A DNA stretch of 64,000 nucleotides, from sequence record NC_071007.1; one strand, given 5' to 3'. Shown one piece after another: positions 18,952 to 30,928 of the stretch (position 1 is the stretch's first letter; each line of letters begins with the position of its first letter). Below the pieces are notes generated by a model. That model saw only the letters and a program-made list of their open reading frames with translations, did no database searches and was not told the DNA's origin. The position numbers and the translations under genes are program-made.

Positions 18952-21798
18952 ATGAAAAGTAAAAATGCAGGTCTTCCACGTGGCTTTAAACCAGTAGACC
19001 GAACTGTATTAAAAGGTAGGCTTGAAAATCTAGGTACAATTGAACAAAGCCTCCAGGCAATTATGGTTCGTGATGAACGTCATCGCAGTGAAAGCCAGAT
19101 TGAAGAAAATAGTAAACCTCAGTTTCGTAAAGTAAAGAAACTGTCGGATATCATTGCAAAAAGTATTCAAGCTGCAAATGACCTTCGTTCAGTCACACAC
19201 TTTATTAAACGAGCTCAACATATTTGGTTGACTATGTTGCTCAAACCAAATGGCGAGCAAAAACAACTTCTTCGTTACGACACTGAAAGTTCTGATATTA
19301 AGAACCAAAAACTTCATGAAACATTGCTGCAGATTGTTGAAAACTATGGGACAACAAAATACCCTATAGAAGACCTTCCTGCTCAAATTATTAAAGATAC
19401 GTTATTTGTTACTGGTTCTTATGTCCTAATTAACTTACCACATAGCGCTTTAGATCATTTAATTAACGGGATGGAAGTTTCTGGTTCTGAATCAATAAAC
19501 TCAGAACAGGTCTTTAAAAGAGTTCTTGACGAACAATTTAATGACAATGATCTTGGTAAAGCAAAAAATATTGGGTTCATCAGAAAGAATCCAGTACAAA
19601 ATAAAAATGAAGGTTTTGAATCTCTTTGGAAAACTAATACTGACGGGGGAGAAGAATATTCATTAGTTGATCCAGCATTTAATTGGACGTTTACTGATAA
19701 CCCTAATGTCTTAAAGGTAGGTGAGTTACAACAGAAAATCAGAGCTGATAAATTAATGGCTCGGTCTGGTTTTGAAAACATTGGGACAATGATGACCAAT
19801 ATTTTCAGTAAAACGGAAAAGGGTAAAGGAAATCCCAATTCTAACCATGTTGCGATTCCGGAGCGTTCTGATTTAAATGAAGCGTTAAGTAAACTTTATA
19901 AACATCGTAACTATCGTCATAATGAGTCACTTAGTATTCGACGTAGCAAGTTTTATAAAGGAACAGGAAAAGGGATAGGTATTACGTACCATGCTCCTAG
20001 TGAATCAATTATTCCTGTTCATGCTAATGGTGAAATTGGGAAACCGTTTGGTTATATTGCTTTGGTTGATCCTAAAACAGGCGAGTTTTTAAAATCTGCA
20101 GGGGATGTTAAATTCTATCAAAGTAATAAACAAGCTAGTGGGAATCTTGATACTGGTGCTGGTTACGGTTCATTGAATGAAATGGCTTCCCATATCAAAC
20201 AAATTGCCCAGGGCGGTGATTGTAACTTTGATATGGACTGGATGATTCAACTTGCCTCTTCTACTCTTGAAAAAGAATTTGTGGAATCTTTCTTTAATGG
20301 TGATATGAATAAATCTGTTACCGTTTCTTTGTCAGAAGCAAATAAGAAAATTTTCCTTTCTCGTTCTTTTAGGCAACAGGGTGTTCGCTGTGTGTTCATT
20401 CCTGCTGAATATGTAACGTACATTGCAACTGACTTTAACCATCTTGGTATTGGTCGGTCTTTGGTTGAAGAAGCCAAACTTCATATTACTCGTTTAGCTG
20501 TTTTAGATACCGCTGACGCATTGGCAGCAGTAGAAAACTCTATTTCTAAAACAGAACTTCGTGTAACACTAGAAAAACAAAATACTGATCCACGTCAACT
20601 TATTGCAATGATCCGTGATGAGTATTTTGCCAGTAACCCAACAATGCATGATATCTTAGGGTACGCTAACCTTTCTATTGATGAAGTACTGGATCGATTC
20701 AAAGAACAACAACTTATTGTAAAGGTGGATGCAGGTGATAATAAACACATCATCGCACCTCAGATTGAAGCATCGCAAGCACAACATGAACCTTTAAAAT
20801 CGGTCGATAGAGATGTTAAAGAAGGTCTGTTAAACGCGATCGCCGGTCATTTCATGTTGAAACGTAGTTGGCTGGAAGATACTGGGGAAGGCGTTGACTT
20901 TGCAATAGAAGCATTAGCTGATCAAGAGATACTGAGAAACCAAGCCAGTTCCTATTCTCGTGAATTTAGTAAATTTATTAGTGACTTCTTGAGAAAACAC
21001 ATTCGTTGCAATGAACCTTTAATGATTGAGTTAGTCAATGTTATTCGCGAGAATAAAAAGCTTTATGAAAAACCAGATCGTTATAAGAGTTTAGAAGAAG
21101 CGTTAGATGATGGTGAAAAAGATGGTCAATTAACCGAACAAGAAAAAGTTGAAACCGTTTTTCTTGATTTTATCAATAACCTTTATGTTGAACTCCCTCA
21201 ACTTTCGTTGAATGAAACACTTAATAAGATCGAAAACAAGATTGAGAGCATTGATAAATTAGTTGACCGTTGGATGACAATGGCTGGTGCTGAATTGGTT
21301 AAGAAATACGCTAGTGAATTTAACCTTGAAGGTGAAGAGTTGATGACTCAAATTAAAGGTGTCTTTATGTATGACGCTTTTGAGAGATTTAACTTGCCAG
21401 TACCGTTTGAAACCATTCTTAACGATGGTGATGGTGGTGGTATCCTTTCTATTGTTAATGGTATCAACAACTTGGATGGTAACGTTGCTAAGTTCTTTGA
21501 AGCATTGTTAGGTGGTCAAACTAAAGCAATGAAGATTTGGGATAAGTTGAAAGAAAAGTTTGGAACACCAGAAGGTGAAGAACCTCAAACTGAACAAGTA
21601 GAACCTTCTCAACCATTTATGGATGATGGGTTCTTTGAAGATCAACAACTTCCTCCAACAACGGGTGATTTTGAAGATGATCAACAAGAACCTAATGAAG
21701 AAGTTGTAGAGAGTAAAGAACCGGATACTTCGAAAGAGAAAAAACCTACCGAGGATGATTCTCCCTTTAGTGATATTGAACTTCCTCCCGAGTCATAA
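18952..21798 (+). CDS. Putative portal protein (phiKZ gp129-like), ~948 aa
   Basis: GGGAG SD before ATG 18952; size and position; segments IIPVHANGEIGKPFGYIALVD and CVFIPAEYVTYIA; G-x-E-S sites (GSES, GFES) and an acidic C-tail as expected for a processed head protein. Confidence 0.7.
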   Translation: MKSKNAGLPRGFKPVDRTVLKGRLENLGTIEQSLQAIMVRDERHRSESQIEENSKPQFRKVKKLSDIIAKSIQAANDLRSVTHFIKRAQHIWLTMLLKPNGEQKQLLRYDTESSDIKNQKLHETLLQIVENYGTTKYPIEDLPAQIIKDTLFVTGSYVLINLPHSALDHLINGMEVSGSESINSEQVFKRVLDEQFNDNDLGKAKNIGFIRKNPVQNKNEGFESLWKTNTDGGEEYSLVDPAFNWTFTDNPNVLKVGELQQKIRADKLMARSGFENIGTMMTNIFSKTEKGKGNPNSNHVAIPERSDLNEALSKLYKHRNYRHNESLSIRRSKFYKGTGKGIGITYHAPSESIIPVHANGEIGKPFGYIALVDPKTGEFLKSAGDVKFYQSNKQASGNLDTGAGYGSLNEMASHIKQIAQGGDCNFDMDWMIQLASSTLEKEFVESFFNGDMNKSVTVSLSEANKKIFLSRSFRQQGVRCVFIPAEYVTYIATDFNHLGIGRSLVEEAKLHITRLAVLDTADALAAVENSISKTELRVTLEKQNTDPRQLIAMIRDEYFASNPTMHDILGYANLSIDEVLDRFKEQQLIVKVDAGDNKHIIAPQIEASQAQHEPLKSVDRDVKEGLLNAIAGHFMLKRSWLEDTGEGVDFAIEALADQEILRNQASSYSREFSKFISDFLRKHIRCNEPLMIELVNVIRENKKLYEKPDRYKSLEEALDDGEKDGQLTEQEKVETVFLDFINNLYVELPQLSLNETLNKIENKIESIDKLVDRWMTMAGAELVKKYASEFNLEGEELMTQIKGVFMYDAFERFNLPVPFETILNDGDGGGILSIVNGINNLDGNVAKFFEALLGGQTKAMKIWDKLKEKFGTPEGEEPQTEQVEPSQPFMDDGFFEDQQLPPTTGDFEDDQQEPNEEVVESKEPDTSKEKKPTEDDSPFSDIELPPES

Positions 21799-21818: not shown

Positions 21819-21854
21819 AAAGTACCTCTCACCCAAATGGGTGAGAGGTACTTT
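21819..21854. terminator. Bidirectional terminator-like hairpin (16-bp stem)
   Basis: AAAGTACCTCTCACCC-AAAT-GGGTGAGAGGTACTTT between convergent genes, A/T tracts on both sides. Confidence 0.8.
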
Positions 21855-21858
21855 TTCA

Positions 21859-22386
21859 TTATGCCAGTACGGAGTCCAGATCGGAACCTTGTTGTTCTAC
21901 CAGATCCAGCACGTCCATGTCATCAGTTTCACCTGATTCCATGATTTTGTTGATCCGCTGAATAGCGGAATCACCAATGCTCTTAACCAGAGCACCGGCC
22001 AGGATACCGACGCAGAAGGATTGAGTACCTTCCAGGGTAGCCATACCAATTGACGGTTTAGCGACGTAACCGGCACCGGCACCGGCAGCGATCGCCAGAC
22101 CGTTGGTGATGGAGTTCCCGATGGTGAAGTCTTCAACCAGCGCTACGGGCAGGATTGCAAGGGTAGCACCAGCTGCACCGATGAGGGCGGCTTTGCCTTT
22201 GCTCATACCCAGGGTTTCATCCAGGTGCTTTTGAGCTTCTTTGGCGGCCTTGACCAGATCTTGATGCAGTTGTTTGTTTTTGGCTTCCAGGTTTCCCAGG
22301 GCATTTTCTACGATATTTTGTTGCTCAACGCCAGGAGCAGCGGTGGTTTGATCTTTGGCGGTGGTGGTTTCGTTGATGGTTTTCAT
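21859..22386 (-). CDS. Hypothetical glycine-zipper membrane protein (175 aa), probably early and highly expressed
   Basis: AGAGG SD; three Gly/Ala-rich hydrophobic stretches; visibly GC-richer than neighbours with CTG/GGT/ACC codons; TATATTAC motif upstream. Confidence 0.7.
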   Translation of the reverse strand: MKTINETTTAKDQTTAAPGVEQQNIVENALGNLEAKNKQLHQDLVKAAKEAQKHLDETLGMSKGKAALIGAAGATLAILPVALVEDFTIGNSITNGLAIAAGAGAGYVAKPSIGMATLEGTQSFCVGILAGALVKSIGDSAIQRINKIMESGETDDMDVLDLVEQQGSDLDSVLA

Positions 22387-22463
22387 AGTGAACCTCTAAA
22401 TTTTATAAGTGAAAGTATCCAAATGGATTATGGTAATAAACATTGTTGTTGTTTATCACTTTA

Positions 22464-22481
22464 GTAATATAGGTTTGAAAG
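22464..22481 (-). promoter_or_regulatory. phiKZ-type early (virion RNAP) promoter motif TATATTAC
   Basis: Minus strand CTTTCAAACC-TATATTAC-TAAAGTG, an exact match to the published phiKZ early promoter core TATATTAC, ~78 nt upstream of ATG 22386. Confidence 0.7.
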
Positions 22482-22511
22482 TTTTATCATATTAAAATAA
22501 ACAAAAAAATA

Positions 22512-22537
22512 GCTAACTCTGGAAATCCAGAGTTAGC
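22512..22537 (-). terminator. Intrinsic terminator hairpin
   Basis: GCTAACTCTGG-(AAAT)-CCAGAGTTAGC, followed on the minus strand by UAUUUUUUUG. Confidence 0.75.
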
Positions 22538-22582
22538 CAAACGTTCACCTTCACCATTAATACTTTCACTTTCACTACTTTA

Positions 22583-22600
22583 ATAATGTATATTTAAAAA
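22583..22600 (-). promoter_or_regulatory. Degenerate early-promoter-like motif
   Basis: TTTTTAAATA-TACATTAT-TAAAGT aligns with the 22464 motif, including the downstream TAAAGT. Confidence 0.45.
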
Positions 22601-22619
22601 TATATAGGACATAAATAAT

Positions 22620-22651
22620 ACCCTGCCCTAACCAAATGGTTAGGGCAGGGT
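22620..22651 (-). terminator. Hairpin after the 816-aa gene (14-bp stem)
   Basis: ACCCTGCCCTAACC-AAAT-GGTTAGGGCAGGGT, starting 10 nt past the stop at 22661. Confidence 0.75.
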
Positions 22652-22660
22652 TATCATTAA

Positions 22661-25111
22661 TTAACTGAGATCAATAGGGATGGTCCGAAGTAATCCATCA
22701 TAGCGATTGATGGCACGAAGTTTAATAACAGCTTTGTCAAAATCGCTAAAAGAGACTGCTCGGATTGCTCCACCTTCTGGATACTTAAACTTGATCAAGA
22801 TATTAGGTTTAGTTTTGAAATGTTTAGCGCCATACTTGTACGCTTGTTCAACAATTCCAAACAACTTAGGTTCTTGTGATTGTTTAATTGTCACGATGCC
22901 ATCGTCGACCGGTCCTGCAAAATGATTGACAGATATCAACATGGCATCATTAACCCAAAGCAGATTTGTTTCAGCTTGTTTGGTAGCCAAAATTTCTTCT
23001 ACTTGATCACCGTTTGCTTTCTTAACAAAATGTGCAACAACTTCTTCTTTAGGTGCAAAGATTTGGAAATTATTCAAGAAGAACTCATTCTTTTGAAGTT
23101 GCTGGAATTGTGCTGCTGTTTCAGGATCTTTCTTTGCAAGCATTTCATAAAGATCATCAGCATCATTAAGGATATCAGTAACGTGGATAAACCCAGTATT
23201 ACCTTTACGTTTTTCTGGATAACCACGACATTCAACTAACCAACGGTTTACTACGTTGCTGAGGTGCTCTGTAACAAGTTGTGTGAACTCGTTGTTATCA
23301 ACCCTAGTCAATGCCCTAGAAACAGCATAGAAGTAATCTGTAGTCTTTCTGTGATCGATTTGAACACCACGGACAAACATGAAGATTTCTTTATAAAGAC
23401 GATCAATTTCATCCATAGAAGAAAATGTGAAAGTCCCTATCATTTTAACTGGAATAATAAATGCATCCAGTTTATTTTTAGGATCAAAAGTTTTAACAGC
23501 AGCATCCAGTTTACCAATAATCTCCCCGTCATTTTCAGATGTCACCACTGATTTCGCTACCAGGATTTGGGGTTCAACATCTTGAGGAGCCATGGGATCA
23601 ATAGGGGTAAATTTACCTTGATCATCAAAACGTTCTGTTGTTTCTTGAACTTTTGGAGTCCATGAGGTTTTAATATCACCATCTTCCAAAAACATATAAG
23701 GAAGAATTTTCTCAGGATCAGTTAAGAATTTTTCCATTGTATCTTCCAGGTTATTACTGGCCATATTAACTTTGACCAGATTTACTTTCAGACAGTTACT
23801 GTTAGAGATAAATTGAATAACTGGAATCAAATTACTGCTATTACCAGTAAATGCTTCAATTCCGAGTTTAACATTTCGACCTTCTTGATAGAAATGCTTA
23901 CCAATATTTACGGTGTCTTTCAAAGAACCAATCAACCAAGGAGTTCCTGGAATTTCTTTGAAATAATCCGTCATGTTAAATTTATCTTTAACTGCCAGAG
24001 TAAAGTGTTCAGAGGGAATTGCTTTATAATCATAACTGTTTAGGGAAACAGTATTATCATGCCATTGACTGGCAATTTCTTCTGGTGATGGTTGAACTTG
24101 GTATGCTTTAACTTGGTTTTGCATCCATTGCTCATTTTCCCTCATCATTTTTGCTTTGAACTCTGGGGTAATGGGTACACCATTATTATCAAATTCCAAT
24201 TGGTTTCCAAACATAGCAACCTCGGCAGTGTTAGGTAGGAAATCGGTAGGTTCATGAATTCCTGAAGTAGTCATCAGGGTATCGAGTAAAGCGTTATTAA
24301 TTTGTTTACCTTGCAGCAGCTCTTTTACACGTCCTACTTTCCACGGGTTTTCAGAGTTAGCTGCTTCATAGCGACCAACAAAGAAAAGGTGATTATCTTC
24401 AGCTTTTTGCATCAAGTTTTTCAATGCAGGTGAGATGATTGTCATTTGGATTGCGCGGTCAGGGTGATTATAAACCCAGTCAATTAATGTTTGGACGGCA
24501 CAATACATTGCCGCATCCATTACATAACTTCTGACTTCATCACCATTATTACTTGGTTCACGACCAGCAATAATGTTCCTAGTGACTTCACCAATCACTT
24601 GCAAAATAACACTTGCTAAAATCCGCTGATAAATAATAGCGGTACTTTGAATTTCATTAAATACTGTTTCACCAATTGGATCGATTAGATGTGTTTCTCT
24701 GTTATTAGGGTGAACAATACATTTTAAACCAGCAAGAAAGCTTGAATAAAATCCATGTTTTTCATTACGCAGTTGTATTGCACGCATAACAAGCGTGCCA
24801 ATTTCTACTGCTTGTTGAAATGCTTGAGCTCTAATGAACTTTTCATTTTCAACATCATTGGCCATTTCCCCCCAAGTACCAGAAAGACCACTACTACCCT
24901 TTTCATAACTGAATCCTAAAGAAACTGTCTGGCCGGTTGGAACTTTAGCTCCTGCGACAGCATTCAGGTTTCCAATAAACTGCTGAAAATTATTTTGTAA
25001 TTGCTGTTGCTGTTGTCCAGGGATTTGTGTTCCTGGTTGTTGCATTCCCATCCCCATTCCCATACCTTGCATCATGGGACGGTTACCGGTGATCACACGA
25101 CCATTATTCAT
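22661..25111 (-). CDS. Conserved hypothetical protein (816 aa) with M/G/Q low-complexity N-terminus
   Basis: Long ORF with GGAG SD, downstream of the nvRNAP subunit gene; function not recognised. Confidence 0.7.
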   Translation of the reverse strand: MNNGRVITGNRPMMQGMGMGMGMQQPGTQIPGQQQQQLQNNFQQFIGNLNAVAGAKVPTGQTVSLGFSYEKGSSGLSGTWGEMANDVENEKFIRAQAFQQAVEIGTLVMRAIQLRNEKHGFYSSFLAGLKCIVHPNNRETHLIDPIGETVFNEIQSTAIIYQRILASVILQVIGEVTRNIIAGREPSNNGDEVRSYVMDAAMYCAVQTLIDWVYNHPDRAIQMTIISPALKNLMQKAEDNHLFFVGRYEAANSENPWKVGRVKELLQGKQINNALLDTLMTTSGIHEPTDFLPNTAEVAMFGNQLEFDNNGVPITPEFKAKMMRENEQWMQNQVKAYQVQPSPEEIASQWHDNTVSLNSYDYKAIPSEHFTLAVKDKFNMTDYFKEIPGTPWLIGSLKDTVNIGKHFYQEGRNVKLGIEAFTGNSSNLIPVIQFISNSNCLKVNLVKVNMASNNLEDTMEKFLTDPEKILPYMFLEDGDIKTSWTPKVQETTERFDDQGKFTPIDPMAPQDVEPQILVAKSVVTSENDGEIIGKLDAAVKTFDPKNKLDAFIIPVKMIGTFTFSSMDEIDRLYKEIFMFVRGVQIDHRKTTDYFYAVSRALTRVDNNEFTQLVTEHLSNVVNRWLVECRGYPEKRKGNTGFIHVTDILNDADDLYEMLAKKDPETAAQFQQLQKNEFFLNNFQIFAPKEEVVAHFVKKANGDQVEEILATKQAETNLLWVNDAMLISVNHFAGPVDDGIVTIKQSQEPKLFGIVEQAYKYGAKHFKTKPNILIKFKYPEGGAIRAVSFSDFDKAVIKLRAINRYDGLLRTIPIDLS

Positions 25112-27983: not shown

Positions 27984-28001
27984 ATAATATCTGCTTAAAA
28001 A
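27984..28001 (-). promoter_or_regulatory. Early-promoter-like motif upstream of the nvRNAP subunit operon
   Basis: TTTTTAAGCA-GATATTAT aligns with the 22464 motif and lies just downstream of the capsid terminator. Confidence 0.45.
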
Positions 28002-30254: not shown

Positions 30255-30376
30255 ACGTATAATCCTTGAAATTAAACATGAAACGGAAATGTAAAGAAAA
30301 CAAATATATTTGTTTGCGTAATGTTATTTCCACGCATAACATTCTGTACACGTGATAATGATTGATCGCAAAGTAT

Positions 30377-30928
30377 TTACGCAGCTACTTTGGATAAAAC
30401 AAACCCAGCGTCAATGTAACCACGTTCTCTTGCTGTTTTAGTTAATAGCTTTTCTTCTTTATGGTAAAAACCAAAGCTACCAACTGTATTTAAAATAGCT
30501 CGATAAATGGAAAGTGACAGATTACCTTGTGAAATAGTGAATTTATCACTCATCACAGTATTATCAGAGTGCAAAATAAATAGCAAACCATTAAACATGT
30601 AATAACTGCAAATTTTACCGTGCTTAACTTTTTGATCTGAATTTAGAACCCCTTGATATTTTGCTTTGTAAACAGTACCTTGACGATTACTATTTGCGCT
30701 TAGATTAACACTGGGATCATCATAAGTTGTATTACAAAAACCACAGTATTGTTTTTCCATGGAACGTTGATATTCCAACCATTCTAAACAGTCTTCATCA
30801 CTGATCTCTTTGAAAGAGGGTAAAGAAAGAATATCTTTTAATTCCAACTTATACGCTTTCAATAAATCAAGATGTTCTTTCTTTAAAAAGACCAGTTTGA
30901 TTTCTTTATCGCCTAATTTTATTTTCAT
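30377..30928 (-). CDS. Hypothetical protein (183 aa)
   Basis: Intact ORF between helicase and capsid genes; contains YCGFC; no recognised family. Confidence 0.55.
   Translation of the reverse strand: MKIKLGDKEIKLVFLKKEHLDLLKAYKLELKDILSLPSFKEISDEDCLEWLEYQRSMEKQYCGFCNTTYDDPSVNLSANSNRQGTVYKAKYQGVLNSDQKVKHGKICSYYMFNGLLFILHSDNTVMSDKFTISQGNLSLSIYRAILNTVGSFGFYHKEEKLLTKTARERGYIDAGFVLSKVAA

What the first reader, a model, noticed from the sequence alone, without database searches (positions are those of the whole stretch)
21859..22481. Isolated early-promoter-driven, codon-optimised glycine-zipper membrane protein inside the late structural block
The 175-aa gene is insulated by hairpins on both sides, has an exact TATATTAC early motif, a good SD, and host-optimal codons matched in this window mainly by the capsid and 388-aa head genes, which implies very high expression. 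The protein has an N-terminal coiled coil, three GxxxG/AxxxA hydrophobic segments and an acidic tail. Inference: an abundant immediate-early membrane-oligomerising protein, such as a component of the early phage infection vesicle, a superinfection-exclusion factor or an anti-defence pore modulator.
Basis: partly seen in the sequence, partly recalled or inferred. Interest (0 to 1): 0.65.

Follow-up and report, generated by a model that had tools for sequence, protein, structure and literature searches.

The report
Chimallin-co-regulated small membrane protein gene
A small, unannotated, probably membrane-inserted protein of a nucleus-forming Aeromonas jumbo phage carries the same special promoter as the phage's nuclear-shell gene and the strongest codon optimisation in the genome, so it is probably one of the most abundant early proteins, but its function is unknown.

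Summary
The window is Aeromonas phage ZPAH34, a Chaoshanvirus that encodes chimallin and PhuZ. The 175-aa gene (21859-22386, minus strand) is real and annotated only as hypothetical.

- **Insulation:** strong hairpin terminators flank the gene.
- **Translation signals:** a GAGG ribosome-binding site lies 6 nt before the ATG.
- **Codon use:** GC3 is 0.53, the highest of any genuine gene (genome median 0.28). Usage matches the capsid and chimallin genes.
- **Protein:** three Gly/Ala-rich hydrophobic segments and an acidic tail.

TATATTAC alone is not enriched. However, it sits in a 14-nt extended motif that occurs only five times in the genome, including upstream of chimallin. That motif is a variant of a roughly 25-30-copy promoter class that precedes chimallin, RNA polymerase subunit genes and many small genes, but no classical late gene.

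The same promoter, own terminators, a 5' hairpin and raised GC3 recur at positional orthologues next to the portal gene. These are in at least seven phages of several genera and two metagenomic contigs.

No Pfam, PHROG, NCBIfam or PDB relative exists, and AlphaFold2 was not confident. Early timing, membrane insertion and oligomerisation are inferred, not shown.

On other DNA, this scan noted early-promoter-driven small (membrane) proteins in jumbo phages.

The parts
21859..22386 (-). CDS of the 175-aa protein (UOX39586.1). It has a variable helical N-terminal part (1-58), a conserved core with three Gly/Ala-rich hydrophobic segments (about 64-84, 93-110, 123-140), an amphipathic helix and an acidic tail (141-175).
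   Evidence: Orthologues.
22393..22397 (-). Shine-Dalgarno sequence AGAGG, 6 nt upstream of the ATG.
   Evidence: Read from the sequence.
22452..22495 (-). Proximal phage-type promoter. The core TATATTAC (22471-22464) is followed by TAAAGTG and preceded by an A/T-rich ...TTTCAAACC element. It belongs to the chimallin subclass ATATTACYWRAGTG.
22433..22459 (-). Hairpin predicted at the 5' end of the transcript (GUGAUAAAC / GUUUAUUAC stem). Orthologues keep it with different stem sequences.
22510..22539 (-). Second upstream terminator-like hairpin with a T-run. It separates the distal promoter-like site from the proximal promoter.
22571..22614 (-). Distal promoter-like site (core TACATTAT at 22590-22583; PWM score 18.2). 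It lies between the two upstream hairpins and could give a transcript of about 75 nt ending at the 22539-22510 hairpin.
   Evidence: Conserved in AerS_266. No Rfam family.
22620..22651 (-). Terminator of the upstream 816-aa gene.
21819..21854 (.). Bidirectional terminator hairpin shared by the gene and the convergent portal gene.

Best explanation
**What it is.** The gene is a monocistronic, strongly insulated transcription unit for a small protein made in very large amounts from the start of infection. Its promoter is the virion-RNA-polymerase (early) type, in the special variant that also drives the nuclear-shell gene chimallin. A 5' hairpin, a good ribosome-binding site and maximal codon optimisation all push expression up.

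**The protein.** It most likely inserts into a lipid membrane through a conserved Gly/Ala-rich helical core. That membrane would be the host inner membrane and/or the early infection (EPI) vesicle. By the charge distribution, the fast-evolving N-terminal head and the acidic tail probably face the cytoplasm. It probably self-associates through small-xxx-small helix packing.

**Likely role.** I think it most likely changes the properties of the membrane early in infection. My rough split within this reading is:
- exclusion of further phage DNA entry, or envelope takeover: about 25%
- a link to the EPI vesicle or the nascent nucleus: about 15%
- interference with a membrane-based host defence: about 15%

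**Shown.** The gene, its conservation, promoter class membership, terminators and codon bias.

**Inferred.** Early timing, abundance, membrane insertion, topology, oligomerisation and function.
For: **Promoter class.** A 44-nt matrix was built from 18 sites that did not include the target. It finds only 30 sites above score 12 in 469,000 positions, and 29 of the 30 lie on the minus strand, where most genes lie. Two of the 30 lie upstream of this gene. The strong sites precede chimallin (phrog_4795, E 1e-86), RNA polymerase subunit genes, the PhuZ region, ClpP/GroEL and many small genes. None precedes the capsid, sheath, tube, portal or terminase genes.

**Extended subclass.** ATATTACYWRAGTG occurs five times in ZPAH34 (target, chimallin and three small genes). 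It occurs 3-7 times in each of five related genomes, always on one strand, with 0 matches of the reversed control. In AerS_266 the same five genes carry it, including the annotated chimallin.

**Link to phiKZ.** In a phiKZ-like genome TATATTAC occurs 31 times on one strand and 8 on the other, against controls of 12 and 7. Published work states that the conserved AT-rich motif found upstream of early operons in such phages is the early, virion-polymerase promoter (PMC7598289; PMC8244752).

**Family-wide conservation.** The same element precedes the positional orthologues in AerS_266, CF8, AhC3_1, PS1, D6, OBP and N1M2, and distant metagenomic members.

**Codon use.** The score is 0.507, third of 235 ORFs, against a median of -0.52. 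CTG makes up 79% of Leu codons against 10% in the rest of the genome. GAA, AAA, CAA and GGT are kept, which indicates translational selection. GC3 is raised in the orthologues too.

**Membrane reading.** Hydropathy is given. The nearest structures to the ESM Atlas model of the core (55-150) are membrane helix bundles.

**Fast evolution.** Identity to AerS_266 is 56%, against 81-97% for ten neighbouring genes. The N-terminus is the most variable part, and in some members it is replaced by extra domains.
Against: - There are no expression data of any kind: no RNA run holds the locus and no virion or infected-cell proteome is published.
- The 'early' label rests on analogy with phiKZ and on which genes carry the motif. 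An exported lytic transglycosylase also has a promoter of the general class, so the class may not be strictly early.
- High codon adaptation is also typical of late structural proteins.
- Only one segment is clearly hydrophobic enough for a membrane span. AlphaFold2 gave pLDDT 40.
- The family is absent from the same position in Goslar and phiKZ-like phages.
- HMM searches of 1.8 billion representatives found almost no relatives, so no function can be transferred.
Confidence: 0.55

Rival explanations
1. A holin or antiholin-like lysis-timing protein. It would be a small three-helix membrane protein with glycine zippers and a charged tail that depolarises or permeabilises the inner membrane. 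A partner could be the similarly built 142-aa protein.
For: - Size, Gly/Ala-rich weakly hydrophobic helices and a hydrophilic charged C-terminus fit a holin.
- ESM Atlas structural neighbours include holin clusters with PF16083 (TM 0.63 over residues 57-142).
- The phage's transglycosylase-type lysin has a Sec-type signal, so a membrane-depolarising trigger would make sense.
- A second protein of the same build has the same promoter.
Against: - No holin HMM matches, even at E up to 1 (Pfam) and 0.1 (PHROGs).
- The promoter is the one shared with chimallin, not a late one, and no conserved TATG late core lies upstream.
- The highest codon adaptation in the genome is the opposite of what a dose-critical holin needs.
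- The tail is acidic rather than basic.
- The gene is not linked to the lysin or the spanin-like gene.
- Four other small two-span ORFs are more conventional holin candidates.
Confidence: 0.12
2. An abundant soluble, non-membrane helical protein of early infection. Examples would be a cytoplasmic factor or an accessory of the chimallin shell whose Gly/Ala-rich helices pack inside a helical bundle.
For: - Two of the three hydrophobic segments fall below or at the hydropathy threshold.
- There are no aromatic belts or clear positive-inside pattern at every loop.
- The gene is co-regulated with chimallin.
- AlphaFold2 predicts only helices with no confident arrangement.
Against: - Segment 66-84 scores Kyte-Doolittle 2.2, and comparable Gly/Ala-rich hydrophobic segments are visible in every orthologue.
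- The structural look-alikes of the core are all membrane bundles.
- Positively charged residues directly precede the first segment and acidic ones follow it in all members.
Confidence: 0.15
3. A late or continuously expressed, high-copy virion-associated protein. One example is a membrane-active protein packaged near the portal and ejected with the DNA.
For: - The position next to the portal gene is conserved across genera.
- Codon adaptation equals that of the capsid protein.
- Goslar virions contain many abundant, unmodelled proteins of unknown function (bioRxiv 10.64898/2026.04.21.720040).
Against: - The promoter is of the chimallin type. The extended late motif shared by the capsid and sheath genes is absent.
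- The distant member P0067 is not next to a portal gene yet keeps the promoter and codon bias.
- The gene is not annotated as a homologue of any phiKZ virion protein.
- The rapid sequence change is unlike its structural neighbours.
Confidence: 0.1
4. The high G+C is a trace of recent horizontal acquisition from the G+C-rich host and says nothing about expression.
For: The gene's GC is 0.52 against about 0.37 for its surroundings.
Against: - The bias is codon-specific and matches the phage's own abundant genes. CTG, ACC, ATC and GGT are raised, while the A-ending GAA, AAA and CAA are kept.
- The bias is present in orthologues that have diverged to 20-56% identity.
- No bacterial homologue was found.
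Confidence: 0.02

Closest known systems
phiKZ-type early promoters recognised by the virion RNA polymerase, including the chimallin (phiKZ gp54) promoter
   Same: - An AT-rich conserved core of the TATATTAC type with an upstream T/A-rich element.
- Many copies on the coding strand upstream of non-structural operons, chimallin and RNA polymerase subunit genes.
- The core itself is strand-biased in a phiKZ-like genome.
   Different: - In ZPAH34 the general core is GATATTAT. The target uses a rarer extended variant (ATATTAC followed by TARAGTG) shared with chimallin and three other highly codon-adapted genes.
- No transcription start has been mapped in this phage.
Early small membrane proteins of lytic phages that protect the infected cell, such as T4 Imm and Sp (superinfection exclusion)
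   Same: The protein is small, the gene has its own promoter of the early type, a hydrophobic membrane segment is predicted, and the protein changes fast between related phages. The comparison with T4 Imm and Sp is from my own knowledge, not from a tool.
   Different: There is no sequence relationship: Pfam and PHROG scans found nothing. The protein is larger and has three Gly/Ala-rich segments and an acidic tail. No exclusion phenotype has been tested.
Class I / LydA-like holins (Pfam PF16083) and pinholins with glycine-zipper helices
   Same: It looks like a three-helix membrane bundle of about 90 residues, has small-xxx-small motifs and a charged C-terminal tail. The Atlas structural neighbours reach TM about 0.6 for the core.
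   Different: No HMM match exists. The promoter is early-type rather than late and codon optimisation is extreme. The N-terminal extension is long and variable, the tail is acidic, and the gene is not linked to lysis genes.
Pfam glycine-zipper families (Gly-zipper_Omp, Gly-zipper_YMGG, Rick_17kDa_Anti)
   Same: Repeated GxxxG/AxxxA-type spacing in hydrophobic helices.
   Different: None of these models matches, even at E up to 1.

Membership tests
Chimallivirus early (virion RNA polymerase) promoter class | A conserved AT-rich motif of about 10 nt that recurs upstream of presumed early operons on the coding strand. | tested here: met
   The matrix scan gives 30 sites above score 12 in the genome, 29 of them on the minus strand. 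Two lie upstream of the target, with scores 14.3 and 18.2. The extended 14-mer occurs at five sites against 0 in the control.
Chimallivirus early (virion RNA polymerase) promoter class | The class drives chimallin and the non-virion RNA polymerase subunit genes, not the classical late structural genes. | tested here: met
   One exception in spirit is an exported transglycosylase that also carries the general motif.
Chimallivirus early (virion RNA polymerase) promoter class | A mapped transcription start and transcription in the first minutes, independent of new protein synthesis. | not testable with these tools
   No RNA run holds the locus.
Integral membrane protein | At least one segment of about 19 residues with transmembrane-level hydrophobicity. 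| tested here: met
   Residues 66-84 score Kyte-Doolittle 2.22. The other two segments score 1.08 and 1.58, which is borderline. No dedicated topology predictor was available.
Pfam glycine-zipper families | A match to the family HMM. | tested here: not met
   No such hit at E up to 1, and none in the orthologues.
Holins (e.g. PF16083 Phage_holin_3_3) | A match to a holin HMM. | tested here: not met
Holins (e.g. PF16083 Phage_holin_3_3) | Late expression and dose-limited synthesis. | tested here: not met
   The gene has a chimallin-type promoter and the third-highest codon adaptation score in the genome. This is indirect evidence, not an expression measurement.
Holins (e.g. PF16083 Phage_holin_3_3) | A small protein with transmembrane helices and a charged hydrophilic C-terminus. 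| tested here: inconclusive
   The architecture is compatible, and the Atlas neighbours include holin clusters. However, the tail is acidic and the model confidence is modest.
Superinfection exclusion proteins (T4 Imm/Sp type) | Blocks entry of a second phage's DNA when expressed. | not testable with these tools
   This needs plating assays on cells that express the gene.
Virion structural proteins of phiKZ-like phages | Detected in purified virions, or homologous to a known virion protein. | not tested
   No proteome is published for ZPAH34 or AerS_266. There is no homology to annotated virion proteins.

The most novel reading that the evidence does not exclude
The protein, perhaps together with the similarly built 142-aa protein that has the same promoter, is a phage-made membrane component of early infection co-produced with chimallin. 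It would insert into the early infection vesicle or the adjoining inner membrane. There it would tie the vesicle to the growing chimallin shell, or open the vesicle so that the genome can pass into the nucleus. No phage factor is known for that step.
Probability: 0.12. Interest if true: 0.85.

Novelty: new variant of a known kind. Interest (0 to 1): 0.58.

Why it matters
Nucleus-forming jumbo phages start infection inside a lipid vesicle and then move the genome into a protein shell. The phage proteins that act on membranes in this phase are essentially unknown.

This work picks out, by sequence alone, a small conserved set of genes wired to the same promoter variant as chimallin and optimised for maximal expression. 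Two of them look like membrane proteins. The target is predicted to be among the most abundant early proteins of a whole clade (Aeromonas Chaoshanvirus and Ferozepurvirus relatives, OBP-like and N1M2-like phages), yet it is absent from all family databases.

That makes it a concrete, cheap target for knock-down, localisation and exclusion assays. The promoter subclass is a handle for finding equivalent genes in model phages. In Goslar the same extended motif precedes chimallin and two small membrane-anchored proteins.

Tried and rejected
**Searches that gave no function**
- Family and structure look-ups gave nothing usable: Pfam, PHROGs, NCBIfam and PDB sequences for the target, and Pfam and PHROGs for ten orthologues or analogues.
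- The word-based search found only three close relatives. A profile search found 59, all unannotated.
- The exhaustive profile search of 1.8 billion representatives found six hits, two of them low-complexity giants.
- AlphaFold2 with a 29-row alignment gave pLDDT 40, so no fold search was run on it.
- Scans of viral contigs with two alignments and one protein found nothing confirmable.

- No RNA sequencing run holds the locus.
- The OBP genome and proteome paper was not held under the PMC id I tried, which I had recalled from memory.

**Ideas weakened or rejected**
- 'TATATTAC is itself enriched' is rejected: 2 found in the window against 3.6 expected, and 9 in the genome against about 29 expected from base composition.
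- Paralogy of the 142-aa protein is only suggestive: hhalign gave 63% probability with one alignment and 7% with the other, and phmmer found nothing.
- Host-derived G+C is rejected.
- A late promoter was not found.
- Rfam gave only sub-threshold matches to the hairpins.

Full report
**Identity of the window.** The window matches Aeromonas phage ZPAH34 (OM810292.1, genus Chaoshanvirus) at 100% identity. Window position 1 is record position 124001. The sister phage AerS_266 is described as phiKZ-like with chimallin and PhuZ (PMC10673249). Neither published description contains transcript or proteome data. The gene in question is UOX39586.1, 'hypothetical protein'.

**Check of the observation.** The 175-codon ORF lies at 21859-22386 on the minus strand.
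- Downstream, a 16-bp hairpin (21819-21854, -29.2 kcal/mol) is shared with the convergent portal gene (18952-21798).
- Upstream there are two terminator-like hairpins, at 22539-22510 and 22651-22620.
- TATATTAC is at 22471-22464. AGAGG lies 6 nt before the ATG.
- G+C rises from about 0.37 to 0.52-0.55 exactly over the gene.
- GC3 is 0.528. The capsid gene has 0.46, the 388-aa internal head gene 0.38 and all other genes in the window 0.14-0.37.
- The protein has 15% Ala and 10% Gly, and three hydrophobic stretches with small-xxx-small spacing. The last 35 residues carry a net charge of -7.

So the description is accurate. The weak points are these:
- The bare octamer is not enriched (2 found, 3.6 expected).
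- Only residues 66-84 clearly reach membrane-span hydrophobicity.
- The 'coiled coil' is just a predicted helix in a model with pLDDT 40.

**Codon bias reflects selection for expression, not foreign origin.** I rebuilt the whole genome from five annotated stretches.
- The gene has the highest GC3 of any genuine gene. The genome median is 0.28 with sd 0.07.
- I trained a log-odds codon score on the capsid, chimallin, sheath, tube and inner-body genes. The target scores 0.507, third of 235 ORFs, behind only the capsid gene (0.559) and chimallin (0.531). The median is -0.52.
- The shift is codon-specific. CTG is 79% of Leu codons against 10% in the rest of the genome, ACC is 77% of Thr, ATC 72% of Ile and GGT 72% of Gly.
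- GAA, AAA and CAA stay dominant. A gene copied from a G+C-rich host chromosome would be expected to favour the G-ending codons instead.
- No bacterial homologue exists. Orthologues that have diverged to 20-56% identity show the same elevation.

**The promoter.** The 160 nt upstream of the gene contain a block of about 60 nt. This block recurs almost letter for letter upstream of two other ZPAH34 genes: a 142-aa gene at record 70523-70951 and a 158-aa gene at 210080-210556. In a close variant it precedes the 662-aa gene at 214507-216495, which is the nuclear shell protein chimallin (phrog_4795, E 1e-86).

K-mer enrichment in upstream regions pointed to a general motif with core GATATTAT. I listed the sites and built a 44-nt matrix from 18 of them, excluding the target and its copies. 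Scanning gives 30 sites above score 12 among 469,000 positions, and 29 of them lie on the minus strand, where most genes lie.

The strong sites lie 35-90 nt upstream of these genes:
- chimallin
- two RNA polymerase subunit operons
- the region leading to PhuZ
- ClpP/GroEL
- an HTH regulator
- many small genes

None precedes the capsid, sheath, tube, portal or terminase genes. The capsid and sheath genes instead share an AATGTTATGCGTG element that contains the TATG core described for phiKZ late promoters (PMC7598289).

The literature states that in every jumbo phage with two RNA polymerases, a conserved AT-rich motif found bioinformatically upstream of early operons has proved to be the early promoter wherever it was tested. 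It also states that phiKZ chimallin has such a promoter. TATATTAC is strongly strand-biased in a phiKZ-like genome: 31 against 8, with controls of 12 and 7. I therefore read the class as the early, virion-polymerase class. This is an inference, because no start site has been mapped in this phage.

**A small chimallin-type subclass.** The target does not carry the commonest form of the motif. Its form, ATATTAC followed by TARAGTG, occurs only five times in ZPAH34:
- the target
- the 142-aa gene
- the 158-aa gene
- a 141-aa gene (phrog_13587)
- chimallin

The pattern ATATTACYWRAGTG occurs 3-7 times in each of AerS_266, CF8, PS1, OBP and AhC3_1. It is always on one strand, and the reversed control gives no match. 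In AerS_266 the five sites precede the orthologues of the same five genes, including the annotated chimallin. In ZPAH34 all five genes are among the ten best codon-adapted genes.

In Goslar a similar extended motif occurs seven times on one strand. Of the six sites examined, one precedes a 379+-residue ORF that I take to be chimallin (GC3 0.55). I did not confirm this identity with a family search. Two others precede small proteins with a single strong membrane segment.

The gene belongs to a conserved handful of genes co-regulated with the shell protein.

**Further expression features.**
- Right after the conserved GTG, every orthologue can form a hairpin at the predicted 5' end of the mRNA. 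Energies are -3.7 to -11 kcal/mol, against -1 to -2.6 for shuffles.
- The stems differ in sequence between phages. This fits a role in mRNA stability.
- A second promoter-like site (score 18.2, core at 22590-22583) sits between the two upstream hairpins. It could give a transcript of about 75 nt ending at the 22539-22510 hairpin. The arrangement is kept in AerS_266 but not in CF8, and Rfam has nothing for it. I leave this open.

**The protein family.** Pfam, PHROGs, NCBIfam and PDB sequence searches find nothing. Close relatives are few: 97% and 79% identical proteins from sequencing runs, and AerS_266 at 56%.

A small gene of the same build occupies the same position, between the 816-aa gene and the convergent portal gene. 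This holds in CF8, AhC3_1 (two copies), PS1, D6, OBP and N1M2. The common build is:
- a variable hydrophilic N-terminus
- a basic patch
- three Gly/Ala-rich hydrophobic segments
- an acidic tail

A profile of these proteins retrieved 59 unannotated proteins. The exhaustive HMM search added only two real members. One of these (P0067) lies in a 164-kb contig away from any portal gene. It still has the same promoter, its own terminators, and GC3 0.56 against 0.17-0.40 for its neighbours.

Some members carry an extra N-terminal domain of 90-170 residues in front of the conserved core. This suggests that the core is an anchor and the N-terminus a changeable head. Goslar has an unrelated 91-aa gene at this position, and phiKZ-like phages are rearranged there.

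Between ZPAH34 and AerS_266 the protein is 56% identical: 40% in the N-terminal part, 71% in the core and 49% in the tail. Ten neighbouring proteins are 81-97% identical. That rate of change is usual for proteins that face the host or competing phages.

**Membrane association.**
- Residues 66-84 score Kyte-Doolittle 2.2. The other two segments score 1.1 and 1.6.
- Lys/Arg residues directly precede the first segment and acidic residues follow it in all members. The region after the third segment is basic again.
- The simplest topology places the N-terminal head and the C-terminal tail in the cytoplasm. This is an inference only.
- AlphaFold2 predicts five helices without a confident arrangement.
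- The ESM Atlas holds its own model (pLDDT 0.67). The nearest neighbours of its core are membrane helix bundles, including holin clusters and pieces of transporters (TM 0.5-0.64). These are leads, not proof.

**A possible partner.** The 142-aa protein (record 70523-70951, just downstream of thymidine kinase) has the same promoter block and GC3 0.49. It has the same kind of build, with a TLGMS motif before a Gly/Ala-rich core. It is conserved in the same phages with the same promoter. Profile comparison gives 63% probability with one alignment and 7% with another. Common descent is therefore only suggestive.

**What it most likely does.** The combination of features argues for a protein needed in bulk at a membrane from the first minutes:
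- a chimallin-type promoter
- full insulation
- a 5' hairpin
- top codon adaptation
- a conserved membrane-like core
- a fast-changing head
- conservation of all this across genera

Rough shares within and beside this reading are as follows.
- Exclusion of further DNA entry or envelope takeover is the most conventional reading (about 25%).
- A role at the early infection vesicle or its hand-over to the chimallin shell is the most interesting (about 12-15%).
- Interference with membrane-based defences is about equally likely (about 15%).
- A holin-type role (about 12%) fits the shape but not the promoter, the expression level, the acidic tail or the location. Four other small two-span ORFs are more ordinary holin candidates.
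- A virion-associated role (about 10%) fits the position next to the portal gene but not the promoter.
- A soluble protein (about 15%) cannot be excluded.

**Earlier notes of this scan.** Two follow-ups on other DNA described the same kind of thing in other jumbo phages. One described a chimallin promoter that is one copy of a general phiKZ-like early promoter. The other described a 41-residue membrane protein with its own early promoter. They agree with the general picture. I tested the promoter idea independently here, but I did not test their specific claims.

**Verdict.** The family is unannotated and restricted to one clade of nucleus-forming phages. I rate it a new variant of a known kind (early small phage membrane proteins) and of moderate to good interest.

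Noticed in passing
window 22505-22614 (minus strand): A second early-type promoter-like site (core at 22590-22583, score 18.2) lies between the 816-aa gene's terminator and a second hairpin with a T-run. It could give a short transcript of about 75 nt containing GUGAAAG-type repeats. The arrangement is conserved in AerS_266 and absent in CF8. No Rfam family matches.
   Followed up: partly
ZPAH34 record 30334-30759, 70523-70951, 145859-146386, 210080-210556, 214507-216495 (L012, L013, window, L016): Five genes share the extended promoter ATATTAC+TARAGTG: chimallin plus four small proteins. All are among the ten best codon-adapted genes. The same five genes carry it in AerS_266. This looks like a conserved chimallin co-expression set.
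   Followed up: partly
L013:20523-20951 (record 70523-70951, outside the window): A 142-aa protein downstream of thymidine kinase is built like the target, with a TLGMS motif, a Gly/Ala-rich core and an acidic end. It has a near-identical 60-nt promoter block and GC3 0.49. It may be a distant paralogue or partner (hhalign 63% against 7%, depending on the alignment).
   Followed up: partly
window 27984-27991 (minus strand): The second-strongest early-type promoter of the genome precedes the 354-aa / RNA polymerase subunit / 816-aa operon, directly beside the capsid gene. Early-type and late units are therefore interleaved here.
   Followed up: partly
window about 30328-30340 (minus strand) and record 22697 (L012): The capsid and tail-sheath genes share AATGTTATGCGTG about 90-100 nt upstream of their start codons. 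It contains the TATG core known for phiKZ late promoters and could be an extended late element for the most abundant late genes.
   Followed up: no
L012:25995-29556 (record 26-29.6 kb): A run of five small genes each begin with a strongly hydrophobic N-terminus that looks like a signal peptide. Weaker early-type promoter sites lie between several of them. This may be a cluster of early exported proteins.
   Followed up: no
L014:18813-19568 (record 118813-119568): The EmtA-like lytic transglycosylase has a Sec-type signal sequence and a promoter of the general early-type class. This is odd for a lysis enzyme.
   Followed up: no
L029 and L032 (Goslar record about 1350-2610 and 164850-166110): In Goslar the extended chimallin-type motif also precedes two small proteins. 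One is 218 aa with a Gly/Ala-rich C-terminal membrane segment and an acidic end. The other is 161 aa with an N-terminal anchor.
   Followed up: partly
window 22377-22887 against AerS_266: The non-coding DNA upstream of the gene is far better conserved between ZPAH34 and AerS_266 than the protein it controls. The promoter and 5' leader are nearly identical in the printed sequences, and megablast gives 85.7% over 511 nt that also cover the end of the 816-aa gene. The protein is only 56% identical.
   Followed up: partly
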